From assembly GCF_001194135.2 (NCBI RefSeq), contig NC_068983.1:146146902-146210901 (forward strand): 64,000 nucleotides of DNA, given 5' to 3'. Shown piece by piece: positions 2,050 to 54,355 of this stretch (its first letter is position 1; each line of letters opens with the position of its first letter). Both the position numbers and the translations under genes were made by a program. Source of the DNA: Octopus bimaculoides. Taxonomy: Eukaryota. The notes below the pieces were generated by a model that worked only from the letters and a program-made list of their open reading frames with translations, made no database searches and was not told where the DNA came from.

Positions 2050-3080
2050 NNNNNNNNNNNNNNNNNNNNNNNNNNNNNNNNNNNNNNNNNNNNNNNNNNN
2101 NNNNNNNNNNNNNNNNNNNNNNNNNNNNNNNNNNNNNNNNNNNNNNNNNNNNNNNNNNNNNNNNNNNNNNNNNNNNNNNNNNNNNNNNNNNNNNNNNNNN
2201 NNNNNNNNNNNNNNNNNNNNNNNNNNNNNNNNNNNNNNNNNNNNNNNNNNNNNNNNNNNNNNNNNNNNNNNNNNNNNNNNNNNNNNNNNNNNNNNNNNNN
2301 NNNNNNNNNNNNNNNNNNNNNNNNNNNNNNNNNNNNNNNNNNNNNNNNNNNNNNNNNNNNNNNNNNNNNNNNNNNNNNNNNNNNNNNNNNNNNNNNNNNN
2401 ATATATATATATATATATAGGTTCAAAAAAGGAAAACGACAAAAAAACAACAACGTGAGGACGTGATACAGATTGTGTTACTGGATGCTCGGGAAAGGAA
2501 CAAAAGATGGAAACATTGGAGATAAACTAGTGCTTTCAACCAAAAATACCCAGCAGGCACATGCACACCCTCATCATCCTCACTACTATAACTACAGTGA
2601 ACCAGTGATTAGTTCACAGGAAAACCATAACCAACATTGCTATTGTTCACAAAATGCAATATAAAATAAATATGAAAAATTCTCATACACAGTAAGGGAT
2701 TAAATATATAGTGAACTGCATTGACACACCATAAGATTAACTACATAATAAACTATACTAATATAGTATGAATTAACTAAATAGTAAAATAAAATGGATC
2801 TGAGTTGGAAATTCTGGCTATGAATCTTCAGTTGCTGAATCAATTGCTCAATCTGTTCACTGTAGAATGAGGCAATTACATGTGGCTGTTAGAACATTGG
2901 TAATTTGACACAGCTGCCTAATTAAACACTGAACCTGTTTTGGCAACAGTGCATTTTGGCACTAGAGGCTAACACATACACACACTGATGCATACATGCA
3001 CGCACGCACAGAAAGTGAGTTATTAATTGAACACGACTGACATAAACATTTTCCCTCTCCCCATACACATATACAGTGAC

Positions 3081-11839: not shown

Positions 11840-12165
11840 ATCATCATCGTCGTTTAACGTCCGCTTTCCATGCTAGCATGGGTTGGACGATTTGACTGAG
11901 GACTGGTGAAACCGGATGGCAACACCATCCTCTAATCTGATTTGGCAGAGTTTCTACAGCTGGTTGCCCTTCCTAACGCCAACCACTCAGAGAGTGTAGT
12001 GGGTGCTTTTACGTGTCACCCGCACGAAGGCCAGTCAGATGGTACTGGCAACGGCCACGCTCAAAATGGTGTCTTTTATGTGCCACCCGCACAAGAGCCA
12101 GTCCAGGGGCACTGGCAACGATCTCGCTCGAAAATCCTACGAAGGCCAGTCAGGCGGTACTGTCA
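11840..12165 (-). mobile_element. (GAT)n-tailed repeat with internal tandem units of about 65 bp
   Basis: Reverse complement of the 1-200 element, extended 5' by tandem GGTGCTTTTACGTG...GGCAACG units. Confidence 0.85.
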
Positions 12166-13276
12166 GCACATGTATACACACTAACAATGTAGAAATTGTA
12201 CATAGCAACAGAGTATATACCACGCATATAAACAATGGAAGGATGCATGCTCTGTGTACTACTATCATGAACAATTGATAAATTGACAGCAAAATTTACG
12301 CTTGAAAATATCAAAATAGGTAATCCAGTCTATGCCAGCATGGAAAATGGATGATGGTGATGATGATGATGTTAGGATGATTTGGGTATTTAAAGAAAAG
12401 GAGTTTAAAAAGAAGCTTCATGAGTTTGATTTAAAAAAGCAATTATCAGAAAACTGATTAATTAAGAAATTAATAAAAGAGAGAATAAAGGAAAGAATTT
12501 TAACAAGGTGATTAAACAGGGTGTTTAACTAAAAAGTCCTAGGAATGGAAGATAATTATCAATGGAAAGGAAAAGGAAAATATCATTAATATTCTAAATG
12601 GATAAACCAGGTTACCTTGTGCCCAGTAGGTGGTGTCAGGATTGAAACAGAATAGCATAGACAAATACTCACGTCCTGTATGTGTGAATGTATGAATATG
12701 TGTGTATAAATATGTATATGTATGTGCTTGTGAGTATAGAAGTGTGTGTGTGTGTGTATGTATGCATACGTTACAGAGTGTAGTAGTGTGTGCACGTGTG
12801 TATATATATATGTGTGTGTGTGTGTGAATGCCTGAGATGTGTATGTGTTGTATCATATATCTCACTACATAATTAAAAGAATTTAGTTTCTGTTCAGATA
12901 TCCAACATTTCAACTCATGTACACAAGAGAACTGTCACCTTTTCCCTCCAAAATCTACCACATATGTTCATGTACATACATAGTACATATATACATCAAA
13001 TTGGATGTTTTACATTAACCTTTTGATGCTGGCAGAAACTGGAAAGTTTTTCTGAAACAGTATTTTATGACCAGATGCCCTTCCTAACATCAAACCATTT
13101 AGGTATGTGTTACGACATGCAAGGATGCAGTATACCTATTCTAAAACTGAGCTACACAATAAACATGTACATACATTTCTACATAAATGATATATATATA
13201 TATATCCTTTATATCCTTACATTATATCATAAATTCCTATAAAAATTCTTACAAAGATTTTAACCATACATTATAT

Positions 13277-13327
<51 letters not shown>

Positions 13328-13330
<3 letters not shown>

Positions 13331-13523
13331 ATTTAAAAGCAGCAGAAATATAACAAAAGACTGTTACTCTGAGTTTCACGTTCCCGTTCATCGGACAGTT
13401 TTGGAACTCAGAGTAACAGTCTTTTGTTATATTTCTGCTGCTTTTAAATAAAGCATATCACTCTACCTCTGGTATTTGAGTACTCTTTTTTCCACCTTGT
13501 TGCACATTTCATGTGCTTACTCC

Positions 13524-13560
<37 letters not shown>
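13328..13560. mobile_element. Penelope-like terminal fragment pair in divergent inverted orientation, inserted in (TA)n
   Basis: Perfect inverted arms of about 48 bp (13328-13375 and 13405-13452) enclose a hammerhead core. The right copy continues past AATAAA to (TA)n at about 13525. Confidence 0.8.
13360..13399 (-). ncRNA. Minimal type I hammerhead ribozyme motif (Penelope-like-element type)
   Basis: 5'-ACUGU CCGAUGA ACG-GGAA-CGU GAAA CUC-A-GAG UA^ACAGU-3'. Stem I 5 bp, stem II 3 bp with a GGAA loop, stem III palindromic with a 1-nt loop, cleavage triplet GUA. The core differs from canonical only by U4C. Confidence 0.85.
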
Positions 13561-13561
<1 letters not shown>

Positions 13562-13757
13562 CAGACAACATACACAAGGCACAGATATGGCTGTGTAGTT
13601 AAGAATTTCACTTCCCAACCACACATATTTGGTGTTCAGTCCCACTGTGCAGCACATTGAACAAGTGTCTTCTACTATAGCCCTAACCCAACCAAGCCTT
13701 ATGACCCGAGTTGATCTGATAAACAGAAACAGAAAAAGAAGTCTGTACAATATATAT

Positions 13758-13800
<43 letters not shown>

Positions 13801-13820
13801 TATGTATATATATATATGTG

Positions 13821-13876
<56 letters not shown>

Positions 13877-14001
13877 ATGATGTAAATAAACAAATAAAAC
13901 TGCCTGGGTTTGATACACAAAATATATATATACATGTATACATGTAAATAGAGAGAAAGCAAGGACTGAAAATTTTCAGAGAATGAATATTCAATAGGGC
14001 A

Positions 14002-14432
14002 CCACATTTAGTTGGCAAATACAGTTTACGATTCTGTACTGTTACTGTTTATATCTCACTCGGAGATTTAATATAACATATCCCCCACTTTTATGAGATC
14101 AGTAGCAGTGTGTTGCTAGAAAAAGTATATAGTATTTGCAAGTGGAATTAGTTCTTCATCACTAGCCAGTGATTTACACACACTGAGGACAGGTAACCAC
14201 CCAGACGCTCAAGTCCATGTGTAAGGCTACAGATGGGAGTGATGACCTCCCTCACAAATACTAATCGGACGCAGATTCTGTGTCATTAGCCAGCTGGAGG
14301 AGATGTTTTCCTGGGGCTAAAAACAACAGTAGCACTGTCCTGTATAGGATGCCACATTTAGTTGGCAAATATATTTTACGATTCTGTACTGTTACTGTTT
14401 ATATCTCACTCAGAGATTTAATATAACATATC
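14002..14432 (+). repeat. 81-bp direct repeats (14002-14082 and 14352-14432) with 350-bp period
   Basis: CCACATTTAGTTGGCAAAT...GATTTAATATAACATATC occurs twice with 3 mismatches. Confidence 0.92.
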
Positions 14433-14648
14433 TCTCTCTTTTATACATATATAGATATTTATATATTAACAGAGCCAACTTACACAGAGTACAAAGACAC
14501 AGAAAAATAAGAGATTTCTCTTATAGCCATTCCTTACTCCGCAAACTTGGTCATTGGTAAAGGTTTTGGAGTGTAAGTTGAAATCATTTGAGCACTAATA
14601 AGTGTTTCCTGTATTGAGAATCTCTGGATTTCATTTGTTGACTCTCTC

Positions 14649-14960
14649 TCTATATTACTAAAAGTGAAATTTTATCTGTCCATCTGGGACTCCTGTATCT
14701 CAATCTACATTTGCTCTACATAGACATATTATACCTTTTTGGAATCAGGACGATCCCAGGATTGAAAATCTGCTCTTCATTTGATTCTTGAACATCTAGC
14801 AGTGGGATCTGATTTAGAAGCATTTGGGTTGCTATTTCTAGCAGGTAACACTTGGCTGATTCATGTCATCTTAGTTGGCGTTTGTTAGATGACGTCAGAG
14901 ATGAAGAGGGAGACATTCGTTTCATTAATTTTACGTTGAGATTTGAATTTTGGGACAAAT
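14649..14960 (+). mobile_element. Probable non-autonomous Helitron/Helentron-like (DINE-1/Lep1-type) fragment
   Basis: Starts TCTATATTACTAAAAGTGAAATTTTATCTGTCCATCTG, which resembles the reverse-complement end of the 56.1-56.5 kb units (CAGAC-rich ... CCATTATAGTAAGAT). Confidence 0.35.
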
Positions 14961-15179
14961 TGGCCAACAGTTGAAATTCAATTTGGGACTGGAACAATAG
15001 AATGATTGCATTACAGAATTAATTCTCATCCATCCTTAACCTCTGATTAAACACCACCAGGACATATAGTCATTATAGACACATTATAGTCATACTATTA
15101 AGCATCCTTTAGTTTTAGGCCCAATTAGCCTTCCGTAGGAGCTAGCTTAAAAGTCTGCACAGAGTACAGCTTCTAACCT

Positions 15180-15235
<56 letters not shown>

Positions 15236-15260
15236 AAATAATAAGGTAGCTAGATACAAA

Positions 15261-15637
15261 ATAAAACAAAAATGGAAAAATTCAATTGTCACTAATAGAG
15301 ACTGAGAGTGCATGGTAGCACCTATATTGCTAGAGATAAGAGTCAAAGACCCTTATAGCCACAAACATAGCACAAGTCTATGTAATGACAGGAGAGTAAC
15401 TGCACCACAGTGAGTGAGGGTACTATATTGGCAAGCTAATTTTGCTTGAAATTAAAGCTCATCAGTAGTACTACTCTATTGCAGACAGTTAAGTCAAATC
15501 CAACATCTCAATATAGAGATTTTACCAAAAAAAATCAATGGCTGATTGAGCAAAATGGTAATGTAAAAATTATAAAATAATAAAAGCGGTCAGACACACT
15601 ATAAAACCAAAAAGGAAAAATTCAATTGTCACTAATA
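15261..15637 (-). mobile_element. 340-bp hammerhead-containing monomer with 37-bp terminal redundancy (retrozyme or Penelope pLTR-like), between (TA)n tracts
   Basis: 15261-15297 and 15601-15637 match at 35 of 37 positions with an exact 340-bp offset. An internal hammerhead lies at 15420-15471, and (TA)n flanks both sides. Confidence 0.8.
15420..15471 (-). ncRNA. Type I hammerhead ribozyme motif with a G12A core substitution (probably inactive copy)
   Basis: 5'-GUACUA CUGAUGA GCUU-UAAUUUC-AAGC AAAA UUAGC-UU-GCCAA UA^UAGUAC-3'. Stem I is 6 bp perfect, stem II 4 bp perfect, and stem III has one A-C mismatch. GAAA reads AAAA, consistent with CpG decay of AAGCGAAA. Confidence 0.82.
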
Positions 15638-15639
15638 TA

Positions 15640-15670
<31 letters not shown>

Positions 15671-17219
15671 AAACGTACAGGAAGAAGGATTTGAAATCTT
15701 GACAGGTACCTTATGAGTACTCTGAAATAATCCAGATCTGGATATACTTTAAGAACACATATCTAATGCTTGAATCTTCAGTTCACTTCACCCAACTGTA
15801 TGGGTAACACCTTGAATAAAGCTGCATAGGAATGTCAACCTTTGCATGAATATGAATTGCAATTGATTTAATATAAATCAACTAAATGCACATATCTGCT
15901 ACATCAAAGGACTCTAGGACACTTATCCAGCAGAAACATGTGATGGATTAAAATTTGTTGAAGATAGTACTTCAATAAATAAATTTTGAATATGTATAGT
16001 TCTCTATTCTTTTTTATGGTCGCCACATAAAAAGCACCCAGCACACAGTTTTGCATCAGCAACTCACCAATCTCTGTTCATAGTGATATAAAGTGTGTGT
16101 GTGTGTACACACATGCACACACGTATAAATACATGAATACATGCATACATGTTTGTATCTATCATACATGCTTCTCTGTGTGTGTGCTTGTATACACCCT
16201 GATGCATGAACATGCAAGCACACATACACACACATACACACATATACACACATACATACATACATAAACACACATACATACAAATGTATATGCATCACAG
16301 AGCAACACAAATACACACACACACACACACACAACAGAAAGCTTTTTTACATAATTTCCATGCCATACATGACTAAACCCCATTTATGAGATCCAACATT
16401 GCTGCAGGCGATTGCTATCTGTAAAAGGAGTCTAACTAAACATAAAGCAAGATGTTTCTGGAAATATATATTTAACTAGATATTTGAGATCCCGTTTCAG
16501 AACGATTTTACATAAACAAATAAGTAAATGGATGAGTAACTATGTAGTTGATCAACTTACTGGAAATAGTAGTGAAAACTCTCTCAAATTACATCTTGCC
16601 ATCTCGAAAAAGAAAGGACAGCTTGAATAATGTAGTCCTAGATGCACAATGTTTGTTTGAAAGGAGAACAAAATGGTCAAAGTTGGAAAGCCTTTGACCA
16701 TTCATATCTGATGTTAAACAACAAAAACAACAAATTCTGACTCATCCAAAATGTTTTCTGCTGGTGAGTAACTATTTCAGAGTTGTAATCAAATCTAAGG
16801 CAAAGCCATTACGTATTTATTCCTTTTTATGTCTATTCTTCCATGCTGGCATAGATCGGAAGGGTCATCGGGCCTTAACTCAGTTCTTATTCAGAGTTAC
16901 TGCTCTCCTGGTGTGTATTGTGTGTGTGTGCGTGTGTGTGTGTGTGTTTGTGAGTGTGTTCGTGCATGTGCGCAAAGATAGAGAATAAAATTTTATCTGA
17001 TAATTGCTATGATAATTTTTGTCAAATGTGTCTATAAAAGGGGTTCTCAAGCATTAAAAAAAAACACGATGATTTTTTTATATTTGATTCAAATGTTTTA
17101 ATGTTTTTAACCCTTTTGTTATCATTTTTCTGTGGAAATATGATGCCTTTGTTTCAATAAATTTTCAAAATAACGAAAAATTTAGTAAAATAATTTTGTC
17201 ATTATTAAATTATATCATG

Positions 17220-17550
17220 AACCATGTGCTCATTTCCTTCTTCAGCAAATGCTTCCACTTCCCAGCTCAAAAAACTTCCATTTGTAGTAAGCATTTGCCA
17301 AGGCATCAGGGAACAAGTCTGGCATACATAAAGCTTTTAGAGCAAACCATCAAAACCAGGTGATTTGCTCTTCACATGGTCACTTATTGCCAACCAAATC
17401 TTAGCTGCTTTTAATCAGCCTTGTACAGCATTCCTGTTCTCCACTGAGAATTGTGGCAGGCTGCCAAAGTAAGCGCTGAAGACCACTACTGTCTCCAGCC
17501 CACAACTCATCAGCACAAACAGTTAAGCAAAGTGCCACTTCAGAGCCACA
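17220..17550 (-). mobile_element. Decayed LINE reverse-transcriptase fragment (L1/Tx1-like)
   Basis: The minus strand contains KSPGFDGL (RT N-terminal K.PG.DG motif), followed by PDLF..ALANAY-like residues across frameshifts. Confidence 0.5.
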
Positions 17551-19064
17551 TAATAACAACAACAACAACAACAACAACAATAATAATAATAATAATGATG
17601 ATGATGATAATAATAGTCCTTTCTACTAAAGGCAAAAGGCCTGAAATTTGTGAGTAGAAGATTAGTTGATTACATTGACCCCAGTGTTTCACTGGTACTT
17701 AATTTATCAACCCTGAAAAGACGAAAGGCAAAGCCGACCATGGCAGAATTCGAAATCAGAATGGAGAGGCAGATAAAATACCGCTAAGTATTTCGTCTGG
17801 CATGCTAACGATTCTGCCAGCTCACCACCTTAATAATAATAATTTACATTTGTTTATAAGTGAGTGGAAGGACTAAAACGAAATCAAATACTGCCTACAT
17901 ATCTTTTCTGTTGATTTTTTTTTTCTATTTTCTTTATATATATATTTACTTACAAGTAAACCAATTTACACCTGACATAATTGTTATTTTAGAAACAAGA
18001 TAATACCCTGTCCATAAGTATATTAAACACCAATTTCTTTTCTTTCAAGAATGCTACACACGAGTCAAGTCGATTCTCTTTTTTTTTAATTTTACATAGT
18101 TTGGTTATTTCTTCTCCAGGCACTTATGCTTAATTGAGAAAGGTGTGATGGGGAGGGGAAAGAAAACAACAATAATAAAAAAAAATGCAAACATAATATC
18201 CTCCAATCCCCCAATTCTCCACAAAATTGCTTTTGGTAGCCTGAAATGTGTTCTACAGACTTCAGTCAGATTACATAGTAAAAGAGACTTCAATGATGAA
18301 GGGAATCCAGGGTTCTTTCAGTTGCAGTACTTGACAAAACAAGATAAAAGCAACATATAATATAAGACTCCACACATAGGTCTCACTCTCACTCTCTCTC
18401 TCTCTCTTGCTCACTCTCTATCTATCTATCTATCTATCTCTATGGTTGTGAAATAAATACACTTCTCCACAGAGACTAATCCAAATACTTTGTTGGTGTC
18501 ATCTTTCTTAGATGTGTTAAGACAACATATCAATGAGTATGAATGTGTGTGTGTGTGTGCTTGTGTGCGTAAAATTATAGATAGATTTATATGTATGTAT
18601 GCATGTATGTATGCATGCATGTATGTATGTATGCATCTATGTATGCATGTATGTATGTATGTATGTATGTATGAACATATATATATGTATGTATGCATGT
18701 ATGTATGTGCATATATGCATTTATGTATGCATGCTTTCACAGAAATATAAGATTTCTATTTGTGTGTAACACATCTCTTCCAAAAACAAAGTTATAAATT
18801 TCCTAACAGTGTCACAATGAAGCACCCTTAAGTATGACAAGGCCATTTTACACAAATAAATACATACATTCAGGAGCATACATAACTACACACAGATATC
18901 ATCATCATCATCCATAACCATTCTTGTTTGAACTTCTGCTTTTTTTCATGTCAGCATGGGTTTGATGAGACTTAGTGAGATAGCATCCCACAGTTGGATG
19001 CTCTTCCTGTTGCCAGCCTTTACTTCTTTATCAAGTTAGATATTTTTTATCCTACTAATCTTCA

Positions 19065-19479
19065 GACGCAGGAGTGGCTGTGTGGTAAGTAGCTTGCTTA
19101 CCAACCACATGGTTCCGGGTTCATTCCCACTGCGTGCCACCTTGGGCAAGTGTCTTCTACTATTATAGCCTCGAGCCGACCAAAGCCTTGTGAGTGGATT
19201 TGGTAGACGGAAACTGAAAGAAGCCCGTCGTATATATGTATAAATATATCATCATCATCATCATCATCATCATCGTTTAACGTCTGCCTTCCATGCTAGC
19301 ATGGGTTGGATAATTTGACTGAGGACTGGTGANNNNNNNNNNNNNNNNNNNNNNNNNNNNNNNNNNNNNNNNNNNNNNNNNNNNNNNNNNNNNNNNNNNN
19401 NNNNNNNNNNNNNNNNNNNNNNNNNNNNNNNNNNNNNNNNNNNNNNNNNNNNNNNNNNNNNNNNNNNNNNNNNNNNNNN

Positions 19480-23440: not shown

Positions 23441-23541
23441 CAGAATCAGTAGAATATCAGAATCAGTAGAATATCAGAATCAGTAGAATATCAGAATCAG
23501 TAGAATATCAGAATCAGTAGAATATCAGAATCAGTAGAATA
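23441..23541 (+). repeat. 17-bp minisatellite (CAGAATCAGTAGAATAT) x about 5.9
   Basis: Perfect tandem units inside the head of an old SINE, immediately 5' of a younger SINE insertion. Confidence 0.97.
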
Positions 23542-23779
23542 AGGCGGCGAGCTGGCAGAAACGTTAGCACGCCAGGCGAAATGCTTAGCGGTATTTCGTC
23601 TGCTGTTACATTCTGAGTTCAAATTCCGCCGAGGTCGACTTTGCCTTTCATCCTATCAGGGTCGATAAATTAAGTACCAGTTACGCACTAGGGTCGATGT
23701 AATTGACTTAATACCTTTGTCTGTCCTTGTTTGTCCCCTTTATTTTTGGCCCCTTGTGGACAATAAAGAAATAAGAATA
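23542..23779 (+). mobile_element. Young Meta-core-like SINE nested in an older copy, with 9-bp TSD AGTAGAATA
   Basis: CpG-rich intact head AGGCGGCGAGCTGGCAGAAACG. AGTAGAATA is at 23533-23541 and 23780-23788. The host SINE resumes with TCAGACAAAATGCTTAGC. Confidence 0.85.
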
Positions 23780-26916: not shown

Positions 26917-27751
26917 TTTTAGGCGCAGGAGTGGCTGTGTGGTAAGTAGCTTGCTTACCAACCACATGGTTCCGAGTTCAGTCCCACTGCGTGACACCTT
27001 GGGCAGATGTCTTCTACTATAGCCTCGGGCCGACCAAAGCAGAATTGTTAGCATGCTGGACAAAATGCTTCATGGCATTTCTTCTGGCTTTACATTCTGA
27101 GTTCAAATTCAACCAAGGTCAACTTTGCCTTTAATCCTTTCAGAGTCAATAAAATAAGTACTAATTGAGCACTGGGGTCAATGTAATCAACTAGCCACCA
27201 CCCCCAAAATTTCAGGCCTCATGCCTAGTACTGCCTAACTGGCTCCCATACCGGTGGCATGTAAAAAGCACCATTCAAGCATGGTCAATGCCAGTGCCAC
27301 CTGACTGGCCCCCGTGCAGGTGGCACGTAAAAAAGCACCCACTACACTCTCGGAATGGTTGGTGTTAGGAAGGGCATCCAGGTGTAGAAACCTTGCCAGA
27401 TCAGATTGGGGCCTGGTGCAGCCTCCTGGCTTGCCAGTCCTCAGTCAAACTGTCCAATCCATGCCAGCATGGAAAGCAGATGTTAAATAATGATGATGAT
27501 GTGCCTATAGTAGAAAGGATTATTATTATGATGAGTATTAGGTGGTGAGCTGGCAGATTTGATAGCACATCAGACAAAATTCTTAGCAGTATTTTGTCCA
27601 TCTTTGCATTGTGAGTTCAAATGCCACCAGGGTCAGTTTACTTTGCATCCTTTTGAGGTCAATGAAATTAATACCAGTTAAGTATTGCGGTCGATGTAAT
27701 CAACTTGCTCCCTCACCCAAAATTTCAGGCCTTGTGCTTTTAGTAGAAAGA

Positions 27752-28968: not shown

Positions 28969-29482
28969 ACAAAGAAGCTGGAATAAAAAGAGAACAAGAC
29001 AAATAAGTTAGCACCCTTATCTAACAAATGTGAGGGAGATATTTATCCTACATCTGCTTCACATTGCATAAATTACAGTTAGCACTAATCTCTATAGAAG
29101 AAACCCTTGGGCTATATGAAAAGATTGATATAAACTTATTAATTCCATTCTTGGCTATACAACAGCCAATCCAAATAAATGCACTGAAGGTAACAAAGAA
29201 GAAGAAAAAAAACAAACAAAAATATACACAAATAACAACAACAACAAATAGATAAATAAAACTAGCCATGGGAAACAAAGCAAATGTTCTGTCAAAGTCT
29301 GGAAACAAACAACCAAATATTGAACAAGATGATTTATTATTCTAAGCTTAGCTTATTCAACCTCTTCCCTCAAAATACCCAGATGAACTCTGTGTACTTT
29401 TGATCTCCCATGTAGAAAGACATTTTTGCAGTTATAATCTGGTTCTTTTTTTTTGTTTTTTCAATAATTTCCATTATTATTA

Positions 29483-29494
29483 TTGGTGTTGTTG

Positions 29495-29531
<37 letters not shown>

Positions 29532-29538
29532 TACTACA

Positions 29539-29584
<46 letters not shown>

Positions 29585-29687
29585 TCATTATCATTATTAT
29601 TATTATTATTACTACTACTATTATTATTACTACTACTACTATTATTATCATTATTATTATTACTACTACTACTACTACTACTACTAC

Positions 29688-29717
<30 letters not shown>
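29483..29717. repeat. Compound (ATT)n/(ACT)n/(ATC)n trinucleotide microsatellite
   Basis: Directly visible. It produces the poly-Y, poly-L and poly-N pseudo-ORFs. Confidence 0.98.
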
Positions 29718-29899: not shown

Positions 29900-30052
29900 A
29901 CTCTCTCTCTCTCTCTCTCCCTCTCTCTCTCTCTCTCCCTCTCTCTCTCTATCTCTCTCTCTCTCTCTNNNNNNNNNNCTCTCCCTCTCTCTCTCTCTCT
30001 CCCTCTCTCTCTCTATCTCTCTCTCTCTCTCTCCCTCTCTCTCTCTCTCTCC
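29900..30052. repeat. (CT)n microsatellite with a 10-N gap
   Basis: Directly visible. Confidence 0.98.
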
Positions 30053-34377: not shown

Positions 34378-34915
34378 CATCATCATCATCATCATCATTT
34401 AACGTTCGTTGTCCAAGCTGGCATGGGTTGGACGGTTTGACCAGGGCTGGCAAGCAGAGAGGCTGCACCAGACTCCAGTCTGATTTGGCATGGTTTCTAT
34501 GACTGGATGCCCTTCCTAACGTCAACTGCTCCAAGAGTGTAATGGGTGCTTTTACATGCCACCAGCATAAGTGCCAGTTACATGACACCAGTAGTCACCA
34601 CAATTGTGATATCACTTGGCTTGATGAGTCCTCTTCTTAAACATGACAACATATTGCCAAAGGTCTCAGTCATATACCATTGCCTCCGTGAGGCCCAATG
34701 CTCAAAAGATGCTTTTCATATCCCACTGGCACAGGTGCCAGTTATGACACTGGCATCGGACACACTGCCTCTGTGAGGTTCAACGCTCAACAGGTGCTTT
34801 TTATGTGCTGCCAGCATGGGTGCCAGATGCCTCCATGAGGCCCAACATGGTGCTTTTTATGTTCCACTGGCACAGGTGCCAGGTACGCAACACCAGCATC
34901 AGCCACATTGCCTCC
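34378..34915 (-). mobile_element. (GAT)n-tailed repeat with about 5 diverged internal tandem units
   Basis: Recurring GGTGCTTTT(T)A.G...CCA.TGGCACAGGTGCCAG units 5' of the conserved tail. Confidence 0.8.
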
Positions 34916-38945: not shown

Positions 38946-39438
38946 AAATATGTACATACATACATGACGATCACTTCAAGTCATCTCAATCAATCTACAT
39001 CACCCAGATAATCTGCATTACATATGTGTGTTCTGAGATGATTCTCAAGACTAGCAGTTCACCTGCAAGACTTCAAACAATTTCATTTTTTTAAATAATT
39101 TCAGTCAATGGATTGTGATGATGCTGGACGACCACTGTAAAAGGTTTTAGTTGAACAAATCAACTCCTTTACTTACTTATAAGTTCTATTGGCCACTTTT
39201 ACTGAACTCCTAAGTTATGGGAACATAAACTGACAGTGATTGTGTGACTATCAAGCAAACACAAAGACACACACACACACACACATTTCCCTCCCTCTCT
39301 TTCTCTCCATATATATATCAGCTGTAGAAACTCTGCCAGATCAGATTGGAGCCTGGTGCAGCCTTCTGGCTTGCCAGTCCTCAGTCAAATCGTCCAACCC
39401 ATACTAGCGTGGAAAGCGGACGTTAAACGATAATGATG

Positions 39439-39496
<58 letters not shown>

Positions 39497-42832: not shown

Positions 42833-45479
42833 NNNNNNNNNNNNNNNNNNNNNNNNNNNNNNNNNNNNNNNNNNNNNNNNNNNNNNNNNNNNNNNNNNNN
42901 NNNNNNNNNNNNNNNNNNNNNNNNNNNNNNNNNNNNNNNNNNNNNNNNNNNNNNNNNNNNNNNNNNNNNNNNNNNNNNNNNNNNNNNNNNNNNNNNNNNN
43001 NNNNNNNNNNNNNNNNNNNNNNNNNNNNNNNNNNNNNNNNNNNTATATATATATATATATATATCACCTTTTCTTATTTATCTCTCGTGGACTCACTACT
43101 TTATCTCCTATCTTTTCTCCTCCTCTGGTTCTGATAATCTCAGCTCTTAACTCCGAACTACCGAAATAGGCATGTTAAGTTGAACTAAGACTTGAAACTA
43201 AGGAAGCAACTTCGTAATGGGTCGAATATCGTATACAGATACAGCTTGAATGTAGCTGGGTATTTTCTATGGTGTATGGTGCGCTTTCATATATATGTGT
43301 GATTTCTCTATTGTATAAATGTACTGTCTGCGCGCCTTTAAGTGTATGTGCGGTGTCTCCGTTGTGTGTGTTCTATATGCAGTGTGCCTCACCTTCAAGC
43401 ATATATGTAGTTTCTCTGTGTTGTATGTATGCCTTCATACGCACGCTTGGTTGATGTTCTTCTGTTCTGTAATGTGCACTATATGCTCGACTTCGTATAT
43501 GTGTGGTTTCTCTTGCACAGTGTGTGCTTTGTGAGAAGAGCGCATTTCAGTAATGTTTGCTAGTGCGCTTCTTCAAGTGAGTGCGTGAAGATTGCAATGT
43601 TGCGTGTATTCGTGTTCCTGCATCTGTTTATGTCCGAACTCGTTTCAGTGTGTATGTGTGTGCGTCTGTGTGTGTGTGTGTGTACGTGCGTGTGCGTGTG
43701 CGTGTGTGTGCCTGTGTGTNNNNNNNNNNNNNNNNNNNNNNNNNNNNNNNNNNNNNNNNNNNNNNNNNNNNNNNNNNNNNNNNNNNNNNNNNNNNNNNNT
43801 CTGATTGTAAATTGCATATTGCAGAATTTTATTTTTGAAAAGTGATTCATCACTTTTTTTTTCCTATGCATCATTTTCATTTTAGTATTAAAATAAGGAC
43901 GAAAAACAATTCAAAACAATCCAAAAGAGATTTTGTAATGTCCAGGTTCAAACAAAAACTATATTTTCTTTTTTTTTTTTTAATGAAAAACATCTTATAT
44001 GATTGCTTTTTACTCGCTGTTTCGTTTTGATACAATCGTAAGAAGGTGTGTGTGTGTGTGTGTACGTGCGTGTGCGTGTGCGTGTGTGTGCCTGTGTGTT
44101 CCTTGATCCATGCCAACTATCCATGTTGGTGCAGCGCTGTTTCCAGAATCAGATGGGATGGTACCAGAAAAGATCATGTTTGTACGGGAATCTAGTAATC
44201 AATCTCGGAAATTTATTGGATATTTTAGATTTACGTTTATATTTTATTAAACGCTTGGTGCTTTCCGGAACTTATGTCACAATGGAAAGACAATTGGAAT
44301 ATAGATGCAAATACTTCTATATAGATGTGTGCGTGCGTGTGTGTGTGTGTGGTGTCAGGGTGTACGCGGAAATTATTAGTGATGCATCATTCGTTATCGA
44401 CTGATGTATTACTAACTACACACACACACACATATATATATTTCACATACATACATACATACACATATACATACATACATGCCTGTATTCACATACCAAA
44501 TGATGCATTACTAACAAATATATTCTTCAGATACTTTGATGCATATTGTGTATATACATATATGTATGGACGAACATATGTATCTATGTATAGCTAAAGA
44601 TTCGCACAATTATCTAGGAAATGGGCAAACCTGTTTTAATTTCAGTAAACTATAAAAAAGGGGAAATGAAATAACGTAAAAAGGGGTAGGTAACAATAGC
44701 GACAACAATAACACAAAAAGACAATCTTTTCCTCTTCCCCGTCTCCAGAACCATCTGCAAAAAAAACATCGACACAATGTTTAACAATGTTAAAAGTACA
44801 ATTAAATATAATTGTTAAAATAATTAACCTGATGGAGATGATGAATAAGGAGGGGTTGCTACTCTTTCTACTCCTCTTTTAGTTCTTGCTACTCTTTCCT
44901 TCCGAATTACAGATTCCTTTCTCTAGCAACGCGATGAGACGAAGTGACACCCTGTTAGGGTAGAGTCGTTGGCGTCGATTATTACACACATAAATACACG
45001 CGCGCGCACACATATACACATGTTTCACAAACAGGCACTCAACTTAAGTGGGAGCTGTTCGACATAAATGAGTCACAAAGCAAACTGGTAATTGATGTAC
45101 CGCTGTGGACTGGCTGCGGACGATATATAGGGACGAAGCCAACAAGACAAGTTGGAGGGGAGTGGTGCCGGCATCGAACTAGGATGCCTGATCTTGTATG
45201 TATGTGTGTGTGCGTATGTGTGTATATGTATATACTGTAGTAGTATTTAGGAGATAAACGGGAAGTTACCAGTTTCCTGTATCCCTTGTAAATGAATGGC
45301 AGCTAACACAAGTATAGAACTATCATATACACTCAGTGTGCATATGTATGAAGTGAATATGTGCGTTAGTATGTATGCACTGGAAAGAGATGCTCAGTTT
45401 GAATTTAACTGATGACTAAAATAAAATAAAAAACATGCATGTATGTGTATGTGTGTATGATTCATCACCTTTACATGCT

Positions 45480-47362: not shown

Positions 47363-47482
47363 ATCTGATCTGATATATGTATATACATTTATGTGTATGT
47401 ATATACACACATACACACACACACACATATATATATATGTATATACTCTTATATGTCTATGTATATACACATACACATATAT

Positions 47483-47552
<70 letters not shown>

Positions 47553-47634
47553 GTGTGTTTGTGTGAGTATATATAATATATGTATCATATATATATATAC
47601 ACATATATATATATACACATATATATACATATAT

Positions 47635-47687
<53 letters not shown>

Positions 47688-48039
47688 ATTTGTATAAATA
47701 CATACAAACGCAATTACAGATGCACAATTGATATAACAGGGCATCTATTTTGCTGGCCTAATGGGAAAAAAGTTCCGTGTGATTATCCCCTTACATACAA
47801 TATTTTAAATTAATGGGTTATTCCCCTCCTGCCTAAAAAAAATAGCATAAAATTAATAATAATAAACATTGGAATATCCAATAAATATAAAAATGTTTTG
47901 TAGCCCCTGAAATGCAGTTATTATATGTTTATTACTTGCAAATAACTTCCAAATTAATGATAGGGTTGAATATTTTGACCAGAAGGGGAAAACAAAATGT
48001 CCTGGAAACGATGGGTTAATTCATTTCGTTCTACTGCTG

Positions 48040-48522
48040 CTGCTTTTGCACCTGATGATGATGGTGGTGGCAGCGGTGGCGGTGGTGGTGGCAGCGGTGG
48101 TGGTGGTGGTGCACCAGTGGTAAAGGGACAATGACTGGAAGAAGCATAGTGGGGGGGTAGTGGGAATAATGATGGTAGCAATTGTAGTGATGATGATATT
48201 GGTAGTGGTGATGGTTGTTGTAGTGGTGGAGATGGTGATGATGCTGATGATCTAGAAACTGATGATGATGATCCTCAAGCTGCTGCTGATGATGATGATT
48301 CATGGTGATGGAAGAGAAGATGGTGGGAGTGGTGGTTGTGATGAAGATGATGGTGTTGGTGGTAGTGGTGGCAGCAGCGGCGGTGTTAGTGTAGCGATGG
48401 TGATACTTGGGGTATATGATAATGGTCTTGAAGATGATGCTGGTGTTGGTGGTGGAGGTGACGACGGTGGTGATAATGATGGGGATGATGGTGATGTTCT
48501 TAGTTAATGATGATGATGATGA
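48040..48522. repeat. Low-complexity (GGT/GAT/GCA)n trinucleotide tract
   Basis: Directly visible. It is the source of the His/Thr-rich and Gly/Asp-rich pseudo-ORFs. Confidence 0.9.
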
Positions 48523-48882
48523 CAATGTTTTTCTCATTATTTCTAGTTGCTGTGGAACCCCATTCATTCTGCCGCCAGGACCTAAATTGTGCGTCAAAGA
48601 GCTTGGCAATTTCCCTTTTTATTAATTATCTGCCACACAGTTCTAAAGCTTCCTTTCAAAGTCCCATTATGCTACACTATAAAAGGATTCTCGGAAGAAT
48701 AATCCCTAATAATATTGAAATAATAATACTTTCCAATTCTTCTTGTTTTTTTATTAATTTATTACATATCTTATCTTTATGTTAAAATAAGTGTGTGTGT
48801 GTATTATTACATATATTTTTTATATTTTTCATATATAACTATATATATTTATATGAGATATATATATATATGAAATATATAC

Positions 48883-48919
<37 letters not shown>

Positions 48920-48929
48920 NNNNNNNNNN

Positions 48930-48974
<45 letters not shown>

Positions 48975-49203
48975 ATATAGATATATTTTTTCATATATAT
49001 CTATGTTTGTACATGTACACACACACACATGCACAAATACACACATATTCCATTATATATCTGCTTTGTATATGTATTTCATTAATTATATATATTGTTT
49101 ATTTATATCAACATATATTTATTTATTAAAAATATATTTTATTACTGTTATTTTATTCATTTTAAATTTTATTTTATTACATATATATATATATGTATAT
49201 GTA

Positions 49204-49294
<91 letters not shown>

Positions 49295-50287: not shown

Positions 50288-51313
50288 TAGGGGTTGGATA
50301 AAATAATGGAAACATCTAGCATCATAATTTTGAAATATCTATATAACCGTCAAAAGCTTGTTTATTTTCAATTTTTTATTTATTTATTATTAGTCTTGCT
50401 TAATACATTTTGCTAAAATTGCTGTTTCTTTTCAGATTTCATCACAAAAAGGTAATTCAAATTCATTAAAATGACAGATCTATCAGACTTTCAAAGACGT
50501 CAAATTGTTGATGCTCGTATGGCAGGCATTAGCGTAACGTAAACAGCCAAAATGTTTAATATATCAAGAAGTACTGTCTTGAAAGTAATGACAGCTTTGA
50601 GAAAGAGGGGAAAACCTCCTCATTGAAACAAAACTCCGGAAGAAAACCAAAACTTTCAGACAGGGACCGTCGGACTCTTACGCGAATTGTTAGAAAAGAT
50701 CATAAAAGGACAGCTCCCAAAAATTACTGCAGAGCTTAATGACCACCTCAAGAACCCAGTTTCTACAAAAACTGTTCACCAGGAGCTGCACAAAGCCAGA
50801 TTTCATGGGAGGGCTGCAATCAGAAAACCACTACTTTCAAAAACATAAGTTGCAAAGCATTTAGAATGGAGTAAAAACCTACAGAATTAGTCTCCAGAGC
50901 AGTGGAGGAAGGTTATTTTCTTGGACGAGTCATCCTTTACCTTATTTCCGACCATTGGCCGAGTATGCATGCGGAGACTGCCAAAAGAAGCATTTGACCC
51001 AGACTGCCTTCTTCCAACTGTCAAACATGGAGGAGGATCTGTGATAATCTGGGGGGCTATATCTTAGAAATCCACCAGCCCAATGGTTTCCCTTCATGGC
51101 AGAATTAATAGTCAAGTCTATTTAAGCATTTTATCAGATCAAATTTATCCTTTGGTTGCAGAACTGTTTCTGGAGGGAAATGCAATCTTTCAGGATGATA
51201 ATGCATCAATTCACACAGCTAAAGTTGTTACTGAATGGCACGAGGAACATTCTAGTGGAGTTGAACATCTTATCTGGCCACCACAGTACCCAGATCTGAA
51301 TATTATTGAACCT
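50288..51313 (+). mobile_element. Decayed, 3'-truncated Tc1/mariner transposon with DD36E transposase
   Basis: Left TIR-like AGGGGTTGGATAAAATAATGGAAAC. ATG at 50471 (MTDLSDFQR..IV.AR.AG), then GRKPKLS, FLDES, VKHGGGSV.IWG, FQDDNA and WPPQYPDLNIIE. 36 residues lie between D2 and E. Several stops and frameshifts. Confidence 0.92.
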
Positions 51314-52467
51314 GCATCGTGAGGACCAAAGACTTGAGGTATTTTGTGTTGCAAGACAGTGTGTGAGAGGGAATCACGATGTTGTAGGAGAGAAATGTGT
51401 CCGCATGGATGATGGTTCACTTGCACTAAACGAAGCTGCAAAGAGAGGTTTGGAGACGCCACTATGAAAGGTTGCTCAATAAAGAGAATGAAAGGGAGAA
51501 AGAGAGTCTGCCGAATGTTGACCCAACAGAGGAACCAGCTATCCGAATTTGACAGTACCTTGGTAGATAAAGTAATTAAGAGTATGAAGACAGGGAAAGC
51601 CCCCGGCCCATCAGGAATCACTGCAGAGATGCTCAAAATATCTGGCAGTGTTGGCTATAGCCTAGTCACCCGTATAGTTAACCAGGTGGTACACGAAGGA
51701 GTCATACCCAATGACTAGTGTAGCAGCACCATAGTCAACTGCTACAAAGGTACAGGTGACGCTTTAGATACAAATAATTACAGAGGTATCAAGTTGTTGG
51801 ATCAGGTAATGAAGGTTATGGAGAGGGTCATAGCCCAACTAATTAGGGAGAGAGTCAGTTTGGGTTCATGCCAGGGAAAAGCACCACTGATGCTATATTT
51901 CTGGTAAGACAGCTGCAGGAGAAATACCTAGCCAAAGATAGCCTAGCTTTCATTGACATGGAGAAAGCTTTGACAGGATCCCCATTCCCTTATCTCGTGG
52001 TCAATGAGGAAACTAAGGATAGATGAATGGTTAGTGAGAGCTGTGTGAGCCATGTACAGGGACACTCTCAGTAAGGTGAGGGTTGGCAACGAGTGCAGTG
52101 AAGAATTTCAGGTAGAGGTAGGGTCCACCAAGGTTCAGTCCTCAGCCCCCTCCTATTTATCATGGTCCTCCAGGCAATAACAGAGGAATTCAAGACAGGA
52201 GGCCCCTGGGAACTCCTCTATGCTGACGACCTTGCTCTGATTGCTGAGTCACTGTCAGAACTAGAGGAGAAGCTTCAGGCATGGAAGCAAGGATTAGAAT
52301 CGAAGGGCCTTAGAGCCAACCTAGCTAAAACCAAAGTCCTAATAAGCAGGAAGGTAGACAAACCACAAGTCCCTTCAGGTAGATGACCCTGCTCGATCTG
52401 TAGAAAAGGCGAAGGTAGAAACTCTATAAGATGTACTCAGTGTAAGCTATGGACACATGCCTGCATC
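51311..52467 (+). mobile_element. Internal RTE LINE fragment covering the RT domain, pseudogenised
   Basis: MKTGKAPGPSG, YRGIKLL, GVHQGS.LSPLLF-like, ELLYADDL, GL..NL.KTKV. Frameshifted and flanked by the 8-bp direct repeat CCTGCATC. Confidence 0.92.
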
Positions 52468-53659: not shown

Positions 53660-54355
53660 CATCATCATCATCATTGTCGTTTAACGTTTGCTTTCCATGC
53701 TAGCATGGGTTTGACGGTTTGACTGAGGGCTGGCAAACCAGAAGGCTGCACCAGGCTCCAATCTGATCTGGCAACGTTTCTACAGCTGGATGCCCTTCCT
53801 AATGCCAACTACTCTGAGAGTGCAGTGGGCGTTTTTACATGCCACCTGCACGAGGGCCAGTCAGGTGGTACTGGCATCGGCCAGGCTCAAATGATGCTTT
53901 TTACGTGCAGCCTGCACAGGAGCCGGTCCAGTGGCACTGGCAACGATCACGCTCAAATGGTGCTTTTTACATGCCATCAGCACAGGAGCCAGTCAGCAGC
54001 CCTGGCAACGATCACGCTTGAATGGTGCTTTTGACATTCCACCGACACGAGTGCCAATAAGACGGTATTGTCATCAGCCATGACAACGATTTCACTTGCC
54101 TCAACAGGTCTTTGCAAGTGTAGTTTATTGTCCAATGATTGAAAGGTACTCTTAAATAGGCTGGTTATACAGCACTGGCATAGGCCACGGTTCTGGTCTC
54201 ACCTGGCTTGCTAGGTCTTCTCAAGTACAGCATATCTCCAAAGAACTGTCACTTGTCATTGCCTTGGTGAGGCCCAATGTTCAAAGGTCATGCTTCACCA
54301 CCTCATCCCAGATCTTCCTGAGTCTACTTCTTCCACAGGTTCCCTCAGCTGCTAG
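53660..54355 (-). mobile_element. Long (GAT)n-tailed repeat with about 3.5 tandem 65-66-bp units
   Basis: GCTCAAATG(A/G)TGCTTTT-type motif recurs at 53885, 53951 and 54016. Confidence 0.85.

What the first reader, a model, noticed from the sequence alone, without database searches (positions are those of the whole stretch)
15261..15637. A 340-nt hammerhead monomer with terminal redundancy: candidate cephalopod retrozyme from a circular RNA
Seen: an ORF-less unit with an exact 340-bp period, a 37-bp redundancy (35 of 37 identical), a central type I hammerhead on the minus strand (15471-15420, stems I and II perfect), and (TA)n on both sides. Established: metazoan retrozymes are non-coding units of a few hundred nt with type I hammerheads. 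They produce circular RNAs and are thought to be mobilised by Penelope-like RTs. Inference: slightly more than one turn of sequence is what reverse transcription around a 340-nt circle would leave. This copy carries G12A and is likely dead, but active siblings and an abundant 340-nt circRNA are predicted. I am not aware of a description of this family.
Basis: partly seen in the sequence, partly recalled or inferred. Interest (0 to 1): 0.82.

Follow-up and report, generated by a model that had tools for sequence, protein, structure and literature searches.

The report
Dead hammerhead retroelement copy in octopus DNA
This is one decayed, non-coding, roughly 340-bp mobile-element copy in an octopus-type genome that carries the relic of a self-cleaving hammerhead ribozyme; it belongs to a kind already known from other animals, and nothing here shows a living family or a circular RNA.

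Summary
Two terminal repeat copies lie exactly 340 bp apart: 15261-15297 vs 15601-15637 are 35/37 identical, and the match extends to 41/46. (TA)n tracts flank both ends. There is no ORF or protein domain within 3 kb.

A type I hammerhead-like motif lies on the minus strand at 15471-15420. Helix I is 6 bp and helix II is 4 bp. The 5' core CUGAUGA is intact and the 3' core reads AAAA (G12A). The motif is not chance: a generic hammerhead model scores it 23.4 bits against 13.2 for the next site, and only 4 of 539 scrambled-core decoys hit the window. G12A is a CpG-to-TpG decay.

The window is octopus or a close relative. Best reading: one dead copy of a Penelope-dependent, hammerhead-bearing non-autonomous element (the animal "non-LTR retrozyme" kind).

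The "one unit plus 37-46 bp" form is the partial-tandem or "tail" signature of Penelope-type insertions. It does not by itself show a circular template.

No sibling copy, tandem array or RNA evidence could be obtained. Rfam reports no hammerhead here, and a competing hairpin is far more stable than the hammerhead fold. If real, this is a new member of a known kind, of modest interest.

The parts
15182..15235 (.). Left flanking (TA)27 microsatellite; presumed half of the (TA)n target
   Evidence: TRF period 2, 27 copies, 96 % matches; it reaches to within 1-17 bp of the element's left end.
15252..15297 (.). Left copy of the terminal direct repeat. On the hammerhead (minus) strand this is the 3'-terminal redundancy, the 'tail'-like extension.
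   Evidence: 41/46 identical to 15592-15637 at offset exactly 340; 35/37 over 15261-15297; last 24 nt exact. Similarity drops to 36 % immediately inside.
15298..15591 (-). Unique body of the 340-bp unit. Non-coding, 34 % GC over the whole unit, with a single CpG.
   Evidence: No ORF over 57 aa; no significant Pfam domain in six frames; no other copy in the window or in O. vulgaris locus L003; fold z-scores -1.35 and -1.43.
15420..15471 (-). Type I hammerhead ribozyme relic. Helix I: 15471-15466 with 15425-15420. CUGAUGA: 15465-15459. Helix II: 15458-15455 with 15447-15444. Loop 2: 15454-15448. AAAA instead of GAAA: 15443-15440. Helix III and loop: 15439-15428. U16.1: 15427. A17: 15426. Predicted cleavage site between 15426 and 15425.
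   Evidence: Descriptor scan; generic type I covariance model 23.4 bits, E 3.8e-5, next site 13.2 bits; 4/539 decoy cores hit the window; part coordinates.
15443..15443 (-). Inactivating G12-to-A substitution. The plus strand reads TTTTGCTT where an intact core would read TTTCGCTT, so this is a CpG-to-TpG transition.
   Evidence: Window CpG observed/expected is 0.42, so CpG decay is pervasive.
15592..15637 (.). Right copy of the terminal direct repeat (the 5' end of the unit on the hammerhead strand)
   Evidence: it abuts the right (TA)n tract directly.
15635..15670 (.). Right flanking (TA)~18 microsatellite; presumed other half of the target
   Evidence: TRF period 2, 18.5 copies.

Best explanation
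This is a single, old, inactivated insertion of a short non-coding retroelement that carries a canonical-type type I hammerhead ribozyme. It belongs to the class called animal "non-LTR retrozymes", non-autonomous elements thought to depend on Penelope-like elements (PLEs). The host is an octopus-type genome.

Proposed mechanism:
- Inferred: an RNA with a 340-nt period was used as template by a PLE reverse transcriptase/GIY-YIG endonuclease. The RNA was either a multimeric transcript of a tandem array or a religated circle.
- Inferred from literature: the enzyme nicked AT-rich (TA)n DNA.
- Shown: the cDNA covered one full unit plus 37-46 nt, leaving the "one unit plus a bit" terminal redundancy.
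- Literature analogy: that redundancy is the partial-tandem / 30-40-bp "tail" hallmark of PLE-type insertions.
- Shown: the ribozyme's cleavage site (15426|15425) lies intact in the middle of the copy, 164-211 nt from its ends. The template was therefore not a linear self-cleaved monomer.
- Shown plus inferred: after insertion the copy decayed. A CpG-to-TpG transition turned G12 of the catalytic core into A, which should abolish cleavage, and helix III has an AxC mismatch that may be a second decay change.

The copy now does nothing.
For: - Repeat geometry and sharp edges.
- The hammerhead relic is significant by three independent nulls: a Markov simulation at 1/400, a covariance model at 23.4 bits vs 13.2 for the next site, and scrambled-core decoys on the real sequence at 4/539.
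- The architecture (helix I 6 bp, helix II 4 bp, closed helix III) matches the published "canonical metazoan type I" definition. It does not match the PLE min-HHR, which has helix I 4-5 bp, helix II 7-8 bp and no helix III.
- Unit size (340 bp) and GC (34 %) fit the published retrozyme frame of about 300 bp and under 45 % GC.
- No ORF or domain within 3 kb.
- G12A sits at a CpG in a CpG-depleted genome.
- 2/37 to 5/46 differences between the two ends predict about 1-3 changes in a 52-nt motif. Two are seen (inference).
- PLE tail of 30-40 bp, AT-rich/(TA)n targets and short TSDs are documented.
- The host is octopus-like, and O. vulgaris has 31 young PLE families.
- A second one-defect hammerhead relic turned up in only 20 kb of O. 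vulgaris DNA, which suggests hammerhead-bearing elements are common in octopus genomes.
Against: - No second copy of the unit was found anywhere: window, 20 kb of O. vulgaris, protein-indexed assemblies, or metagenome/genome/viral DNA scans. Family status is therefore unproven.
- Rfam reports no hammerhead family, even at E<=10 on 86 nt.
- Only one ribozyme and 1.13 units are present, whereas retrozymes are defined as tandem repeats.
- The hammerhead fold is weak (-1.4 kcal/mol) against a competing hairpin (-9.7).
- The unit is not more structured than its shuffles.
- (TA)n tracts are so frequent here (24 in 64 kb; 8 of 23 gaps are <=450 bp) that the flanks alone prove little.
- No empty site is available to fix the true ends or rule out a TSD.
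Confidence: 0.6

Rival explanations
1. The copy was reverse-transcribed around a 340-nt circular RNA, and it belongs to a still-active cephalopod retrozyme family that produces abundant circRNA. This reading is a stronger subset of the best explanation, not an exclusive alternative, so its 0.2 is part of the best explanation's 0.6 rather than additional to it.
For: The intact cleavage site in the middle of a more-than-unit-length copy fits a religated circle. Rolling reverse transcription of circRNA is the mechanism proposed for metazoan retrozymes. PLEs are currently active in O. vulgaris.
Against: The same geometry arises from a linear multimeric transcript plus the two RT start sites of PLEs. 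There is no tandem array, no sibling and no RNA data. This copy is dead. The unit shows no compact fold. The hammerhead fold is thermodynamically poor.
Confidence: 0.2
2. It is a solo or rearranged pseudo-LTR fragment of an autonomous Penelope-like element, not a separate short-period non-autonomous family. The terminal repeat would be the pLTR tail or an internal pLTR repeat.
For: pLTRs carry hammerheads, are 180-220 bp or more, have an optional ~31-bp tail, occur as solo copies, and can mobilise unrelated inserts. A 2026 preprint finds retrozyme families nested next to pLTRs.
Against: No RT or GIY-YIG remnant lies within 3 kb on either strand. The redundancy has a 340-bp period, so the template repeated every 340 nt rather than every 3-4 kb. 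The hammerhead has the canonical rather than the PLE-minimal architecture.
Confidence: 0.15
3. The hammerhead relic is real, but the 37-46-bp repeat is not part of the element. It would be an unusually long target-site duplication of the sequence between two (TA)n tracts, or a later local duplication. The element would then be about 294 bp.
For: Both repeat copies abut a (TA)n tract on their outer side only. PLE endonuclease prefers (TA)n/AT-rich DNA, so staggered nicks in the two tracts are conceivable.
Against: Documented PLE TSDs are short, 8-10 bp. No TA tract is duplicated at the inner junctions.
Confidence: 0.1
4. There is no ribozyme history. A chance hammerhead-like string lies inside a hairpin-prone stretch of a local partial duplication in microsatellite-rich DNA.
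For: Rfam reports no hammerhead. G12 is missing. A 19-bp imperfect hairpin over the same 52 nt is far more stable than the hammerhead fold. Across a multi-gigabase genome, roughly 100 or more such one-defect motifs are expected by chance, extrapolating.
Against: The empirical chance is about 0.007 per window with real-sequence decoys. The motif sits centrally in an independently defined repeat unit of retrozyme size. The one core defect is exactly a CpG decay.
Confidence: 0.07

Closest known systems
Metazoan non-LTR retrozymes (Cervera & de la Pena 2020, PMC7229834), e.g. Mytilus, Acropora and axolotl repeats; historically newt satellite 2 (~330 bp). Schistosoma Sm-alpha is added from my own knowledge.
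   Same: A non-coding unit of a few hundred bp (340), low GC (34 %), and a canonical-type type I hammerhead with helix I 6 bp and helix II 4 bp. The host genome also carries PLEs. The copy spans the ribozyme cleavage site, as expected for a circle- or multimer-derived cDNA.
   Different: Only 1.13 units and one ribozyme here, not a tandem array. The ribozyme core is mutated (G12A). No family, expression or circRNA is shown. No cephalopod example was found in the searchable literature.
Penelope-like element pseudo-LTRs with minimal hammerheads (Cervera & de la Pena 2014, PMC4209133; Arkhipova et al. 2013, PMC3846280; Frangieh et al. 2024, PMC11167929)
   Same: Partial-tandem "one unit plus x" architecture. 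A terminal extension in the 30-40-bp "tail" size range. An AT-rich/(TA)n insertion site. A hammerhead on the element.
   Different: No RT/GIY-YIG ORF is nearby. The period is 340 bp rather than 3-4 kb. The hammerhead has helix I 6 bp, helix II 4 bp and a closed helix III, whereas the min-HHR has helix I 4-5 bp, helix II 7-8 bp and no helix III.
Plant LTR retrozymes (Cervera et al. 2016, PMC4918200)
   Same: Non-autonomous, non-coding, hammerhead-bearing elements with direct terminal repeats and a circRNA intermediate.
   Different: Plant elements use type III hammerheads, one in each of two ~350-bp LTRs. They have PBS/PPT and a 4-bp TSD, GC above 55 %, and are mobilised by Gypsy. None of these features is present here.

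Membership tests
Hammerhead ribozyme, type I (canonical metazoan architecture) | 5' core CUGANGA directly 3' of helix I | tested here: met
   CUGAUGA at 15465-15459 (-).
Hammerhead ribozyme, type I (canonical metazoan architecture) | 3' core GAAA (G12 A13 A14 A15.1) after helix II | tested here: not met
   Reads AAAA. G12 is A (15443). The plus strand reads TTTTGCTT against the expected TTTCGCTT.
Hammerhead ribozyme, type I (canonical metazoan architecture) | Open helix I (~6 bp), closed helix II (~4 bp), closed helix III with an A15.1-U16.1 pair and a non-G at position 17 | tested here: met
   Helix I is 6 bp and helix II is 4 bp, both perfect. Helix III is A-U, U-A, U-A, AxC, G-C with a CUUG loop. 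Position 17 is A. This matches the definition in PMC4209133.
Hammerhead ribozyme, type I (canonical metazoan architecture) | Detected by the curated Rfam hammerhead models | tested here: not met
   No hammerhead family was reported at gathering score on the window, nor at E<=10 on 701 nt or 86 nt.
Hammerhead ribozyme, type I (canonical metazoan architecture) | The hammerhead conformation is energetically accessible | tested here: inconclusive
   Hammerhead fold -1.4 kcal/mol against a competing hairpin at -9.7, or -13.2 with G12 restored. Natural dimer-dependent hammerheads behave similarly.
Hammerhead ribozyme, type I (canonical metazoan architecture) | Self-cleavage | not testable with these tools
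   Needs an in vitro transcription assay. G12A is expected to abolish activity (established knowledge).
Metazoan non-LTR retrozyme | Non-coding unit of ~150-450 bp with GC below 45 % | tested here: met
   340-bp period, 34 % GC, no ORF or domain. Criteria.
Metazoan non-LTR retrozyme | Head-to-tail tandem arrangement (dimers to multimers), one hammerhead per unit | tested here: not met
   Only 1.13-1.19 units and one hammerhead. TRF and repeat search find no further unit. A 2026 preprint does report monomer derivatives of retrozyme families.
Metazoan non-LTR retrozyme | A multi-copy family in the genome | tested here: inconclusive
   No sibling in the 64-kb window or in 20 kb of O. vulgaris. 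No octopus genome is searchable by DNA with these tools. Indirect routes all came back empty.
Metazoan non-LTR retrozyme | Expressed as linear and circular monomeric RNA | not testable with these tools
   No transcriptome access.
Metazoan non-LTR retrozyme | Co-occurrence with autonomous PLEs in the host | tested here: met
   The window is octopus-like. O. vulgaris has 31 recently active PLE families with 336 insertions (PMC13282606).
Penelope-like element (autonomous copy or its pLTR) | Adjacent ORF with RT and GIY-YIG endonuclease | tested here: not met
   Six-frame Pfam of 12300-18600 shows no RVT or GIY-YIG. The only RT in the window is a LINE-type remnant at 51413-52383.
Penelope-like element (autonomous copy or its pLTR) | Partial-tandem terminal redundancy / 30-40-bp tail | tested here: met
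   A 37-46-bp redundancy at the two ends. The size matches the tail described. Homology to a real PLE tail could not be tested.
Penelope-like element (autonomous copy or its pLTR) | Minimal hammerhead (helix I 4-5 bp, helix II 7-8 bp, no helix III) | tested here: not met
   Helix I is 6 bp, helix II is 4 bp and helix III is present.
Penelope-like element (autonomous copy or its pLTR) | Insertion into AT-rich/(TA)n DNA with a short TSD | tested here: inconclusive
   (TA)n lies on both sides. However, TA tracts are dense in this window, and a TSD cannot be read inside a microsatellite.

The most novel reading that the evidence does not exclude
Octopus genomes harbour an undescribed, still-active family of ~340-nt hammerhead retrozymes. 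The family would be mobilised by the currently active octopus Penelope elements and expressed as abundant small circular RNAs. This copy and the second relic in O. vulgaris would be fossils of it.
Probability: 0.15. Interest if true: 0.55.

Novelty: new member of a known kind. Interest (0 to 1): 0.3.

Why it matters
If siblings exist, this would extend hammerhead retrozymes to cephalopods. Repeats make up about two thirds of the O. vulgaris genome and Penelope elements are still active there. It would also provide a clean natural example of a monomeric "one unit plus tail" insertion. Such an example bears on an open question: are retrozymes copied from circles, or from multimeric transcripts by the PLE two-start-site mechanism? 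As it stands, this is one dead copy. Its practical value is as a seed sequence for a genome-wide and transcriptome-wide search.

Tried and rejected
Searches that led nowhere:
- Rfam, three times: whole window at gathering score, then 701 nt and 86 nt at E<=10. No hammerhead reported.
- Sibling search inside the window with blastn, word size 7. Nothing beyond the terminal repeat.
- Exact look-up of the unit's 44-aa ORF in the assembly index. Absent.
- Homology search with a concatenated six-frame pseudo-protein of the unit. 1653 word candidates, none at E<=1.
- DNA pattern scans. The 24-nt terminal repeat in metagenomes gave 0 hits. Core plus helix II in prokaryotic genomes gave 0. A degenerate core pattern in metagenomes gave one chance hit, in an unrelated 56 % GC contig. 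The same pattern in viral contigs gave 0.
- Sampling the host genome through the window's LINE RT. Relatives are only 45-60 % identical, and the contigs fetched share nothing with the window.
- Ten window ORFs are not in the protein collection, so no orthologous or empty-site locus could be fetched.
- The SINE-like repeat handle gave one 20-kb O. vulgaris locus. That was enough to place the organism but not to find a sibling.

Alternatives considered and rejected:
- DNA transposon or MITE with TIRs: the termini match at only 10/40 positions.
- Helitron: no CTRR end by inspection.
- Linear self-cleaved monomer as template: the cleavage site is internal and intact.
- Compact viroid-like fold: z about -1.4 on both strands.

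Correction during the work: I first took the covariance-model E-value at face value. A 22.3-bit near-miss in O. vulgaris made me replace it with a real-sequence decoy null.

Full report
**What is in the sequence.**
- A direct repeat occurs at a start-to-start spacing of exactly 340 bp. 15252-15297 vs 15592-15637 is 41/46 identical. The 37-nt core 15261-15297 is 35/37, and the last 24 nt are exact. Identity falls to background immediately outside. A gapped alignment can stretch the similarity to about 66 nt through A-rich sequence.
- The locus therefore holds 1.13-1.19 copies of a 340-bp unit.
- It is bracketed by (TA)27 (15182-15235) and (TA)~18 (15635-15670).
- The unit is 34 % GC and has one CpG. 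It has no ORF above 57 aa.
- Six-frame Pfam scans of 12300-18600 find no significant domain match on either strand; the only hit listed is a sub-threshold Orf78 match (E = 0.018, 15.8 bits against a cut-off of 29.4). The unit is not attached to a Penelope ORF.
- The only coding remnants in the window are a Tc1-like transposase and a LINE-type RT, about 35 kb away.

**The hammerhead.** On the minus strand, 15471-15420 reads GUACUA-CUGAUGA-GCUU-UAAUUUC-AAGC-AAAA-UUAGCUUGCCAA-U-A-UAGUAC.
- Helix I is 6 bp and helix II is 4 bp, both perfect.
- Helix III is A-U, U-A, U-A, an AxC mismatch, then G-C closed by CUUG.
- The cleavage dinucleotide is U-A.
- The only core defect is A in place of G12.
- The published definition of canonical metazoan type I hammerheads is helix I 6 bp and helix II 4 bp. 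PLE-borne minimal hammerheads have helix I 4-5 bp, helix II 7-8 bp and no helix III. This motif is of the canonical, retrozyme-associated type.

**Is the motif more than chance?** Rfam reports no hammerhead family at gathering score, nor at E<=10 on 701 or 86 nt, so I tested it three other ways.
1. A descriptor scan of 400 composition-matched simulated windows gave one motif of this quality.
2. A generic type I covariance model, built from 60 synthetic sequences with a fixed core and sequence-free covarying helices, scored the site at 23.4 bits (E about 4e-5). The next-best site in the window scored 13.2 bits.
3. The same model then found a 22.3-bit near-miss (A9-to-U) in only 20 kb of Octopus vulgaris DNA. 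I therefore stopped trusting the E-value and built a harder null. I kept the real sequences and permuted the core letters. Of 539 decoy cores, 4 hit the window, 1 hit the O. vulgaris locus and none hit both. The true core hits each once.

The relic is real with high probability, and octopus DNA appears enriched in decayed hammerheads.

**The G12A defect.** On the plus strand it is TTTCGCTT changed to TTTTGCTT, a CpG-to-TpG transition, in a window whose CpG observed/expected ratio is 0.42. The two ends of the element differ at 2/37 to 5/46 positions. That predicts roughly one to three substitutions in a 52-nt motif. Two departures from an ideal hammerhead are seen: G12A and the helix III mismatch.

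**Caveats on function.**
- The nearest-neighbour energy of the hammerhead fold is only -1.4 kcal/mol. A competing hairpin that buries the core reaches -9.7, or -13.2 with G12 restored.
- Neither strand of the unit folds better than its shuffles (z = -1.35 and -1.43).
- Dimer-dependent animal hammerheads are also unstable as monomers. These points weaken the case but do not refute it.

**Host.** A repeat-derived reading frame from the window matches predicted proteins of Octopus bimaculoides (69 %) and O. vulgaris (75 %). A 20-kb stretch of O. vulgaris chromosome OX597840.1 shares dozens of interspersed repeats with the window at 75-93 % identity. The window is therefore from an octopus or a close relative. 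A 2026 repeat annotation of O. vulgaris lists 31 recently active PLE families with 336 insertions, and dates a PLE expansion at about 56 My. It does not mention hammerheads or retrozymes.

**Mechanism.**
- The cleavage site (15426|15425) lies uninterrupted 164-211 nt from the element's ends. The template was therefore not a linear self-cleaved monomer. It was either an uncleaved multimeric transcript or a religated circle.
The literature offers an equally good and better-documented source. PLE insertions are typically partial tandems. They carry an optional 30-40-bp "tail" that extends one end into the start of the next unit. The tail has been traced to two adjacent internal RT initiation sites.
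- PLE endonucleases prefer AT-rich and (TA)n targets and make short TSDs of 8-10 bp.
- The geometry here is one 340-bp unit, a 37-46-bp extension and (TA)n on both sides. That is what a PLE enzyme copying a 340-nt-period RNA would leave. Because the period is 340 bp and not 3-4 kb, the template was a short-period element of the retrozyme kind rather than an autonomous PLE.
- Whether the template was circular cannot be decided from one copy.
- The (TA)n flanks are weaker evidence than they look. The window has 24 pure (TA)>=9 tracts, and 8 of 23 successive gaps are <=450 bp, several of them across assembly gaps. This is the only such interval with terminal redundancy.

**What could not be shown.** No sibling copy was found.
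- None in the window or in the O. vulgaris sample.
- None by exact ORF look-up or by a six-frame pseudo-protein homology search.
- None by DNA pattern scans of metagenome, prokaryote and viral collections.
- The host genome could not be sampled further.

Family size, consensus, tandem arrays, permuted ends, relation to pLTRs and any RNA are all untested. No cephalopod retrozyme was found in the searchable literature. However, animal retrozymes are described as widespread across phyla, including molluscs, and a 2026 preprint derives them from pLTRs and reports monomeric derivatives.

**Verdict.** The most likely reading (about 0.6) is a dead monomeric copy of a PLE-dependent, hammerhead-bearing non-autonomous element. 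If real, that is a new member of a known kind. Rivals:
- a solo pLTR fragment (about 0.15);
- a real relic whose flanking repeat is a long TSD or a local duplication (about 0.1);
- a chance motif (about 0.07).

The claim of a living family with an abundant 340-nt circRNA is a stronger subset of the best reading rather than a competing alternative, so its probability (about 0.15-0.2) is part of the 0.6 and not additional to it. It stays a prediction. Interest is modest.

Noticed in passing
L003:10622-10668 (+), i.e. Octopus vulgaris OX597840.1, reversed range 21090315-21110728: A second hammerhead-like relic: CCACUA-CUGAAGU-GAUC-CAAGAA-GAUC-GAAA-...-UC-UGGUGG. It has an intact GAAA, helix I 6 bp and helix II 4 bp, but A9 is U. 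It scores 22.3 bits with my generic model. It is unrelated in sequence to the window's unit and lies next to TA/TG microsatellite. Two relics in 84 kb, against about 0.01 expected from decoys, suggests octopus DNA is rich in decayed hammerheads.
   Followed up: partly
window 50560-51320 (+) and 51413-52383 (+): Degenerate Tc1-like transposase (DDE_3, HTH_Tnp_Tc3_2), immediately followed by a frameshifted LINE-type reverse transcriptase (RVT_1, E = 3e-21; FGFMPGKST...YADD). The closest RT relatives in the protein collection are only 45-60 % identical.
   Followed up: partly
window 12002-12135, 53723-54043 (also around 1-190, 11840-12112, 27239-27500, 34385-34576, 39319-39462): Copies of an abundant octopus interspersed repeat with an internal 66-67-bp tandem. 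Its reading frame (FHASMG...RAGKPEGCTRLQS...ALPNAN) is annotated as 'protein' in O. bimaculoides (A0A0L8GDB2, as C2H2-type domain-containing) and O. vulgaris (hypothetical protein). These are probably repeat-derived gene-model artefacts.
   Followed up: partly
window 2050-2400, 19333-19479, 42833-43043, 43720-43799, plus four 10-N runs (22610, 29969, 40748, 48920): Assembly gaps. Several sit directly inside or beside (TA)n, (CT)n or (GT)n microsatellites, so tract lengths there are unknown and some 'close TA pairs' are artefacts of gaps.
   Followed up: no
window 23441-23541: A perfect 17-bp tandem repeat (CAGAATCAGTAGAATAT x 5.9, 100 % identity), unusually clean for this otherwise decayed region. 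It abuts a repeat shared with O. vulgaris (23542-23773, 88 %).
   Followed up: no
window 14287-14322 vs L003:10736-10771: A 36-nt match (92 %) between sequence about 0.9 kb upstream of the unit and sequence about 70 nt downstream of the O. vulgaris hammerhead relic. There is no hammerhead-like site next to the window copy. It is probably a fragment of a shared repeat.
   Followed up: partly
window 48031-48609: A long open frame on both strands through trinucleotide-type low complexity (His/Gln/Thr-rich on the minus strand, Pro/Ser/Gly-rich on the plus strand). It could be a low-complexity exon or just microsatellite-derived sequence.
   Followed up: no
window 29473-29716 and 29901-30051; 47427-47683; 48831-49256: Very long microsatellites: (ATT)81, (CT)75, (AT)127 and (AT)~216. 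Overall the window is 35 % GC with CpG observed/expected of 0.42.
   Followed up: no
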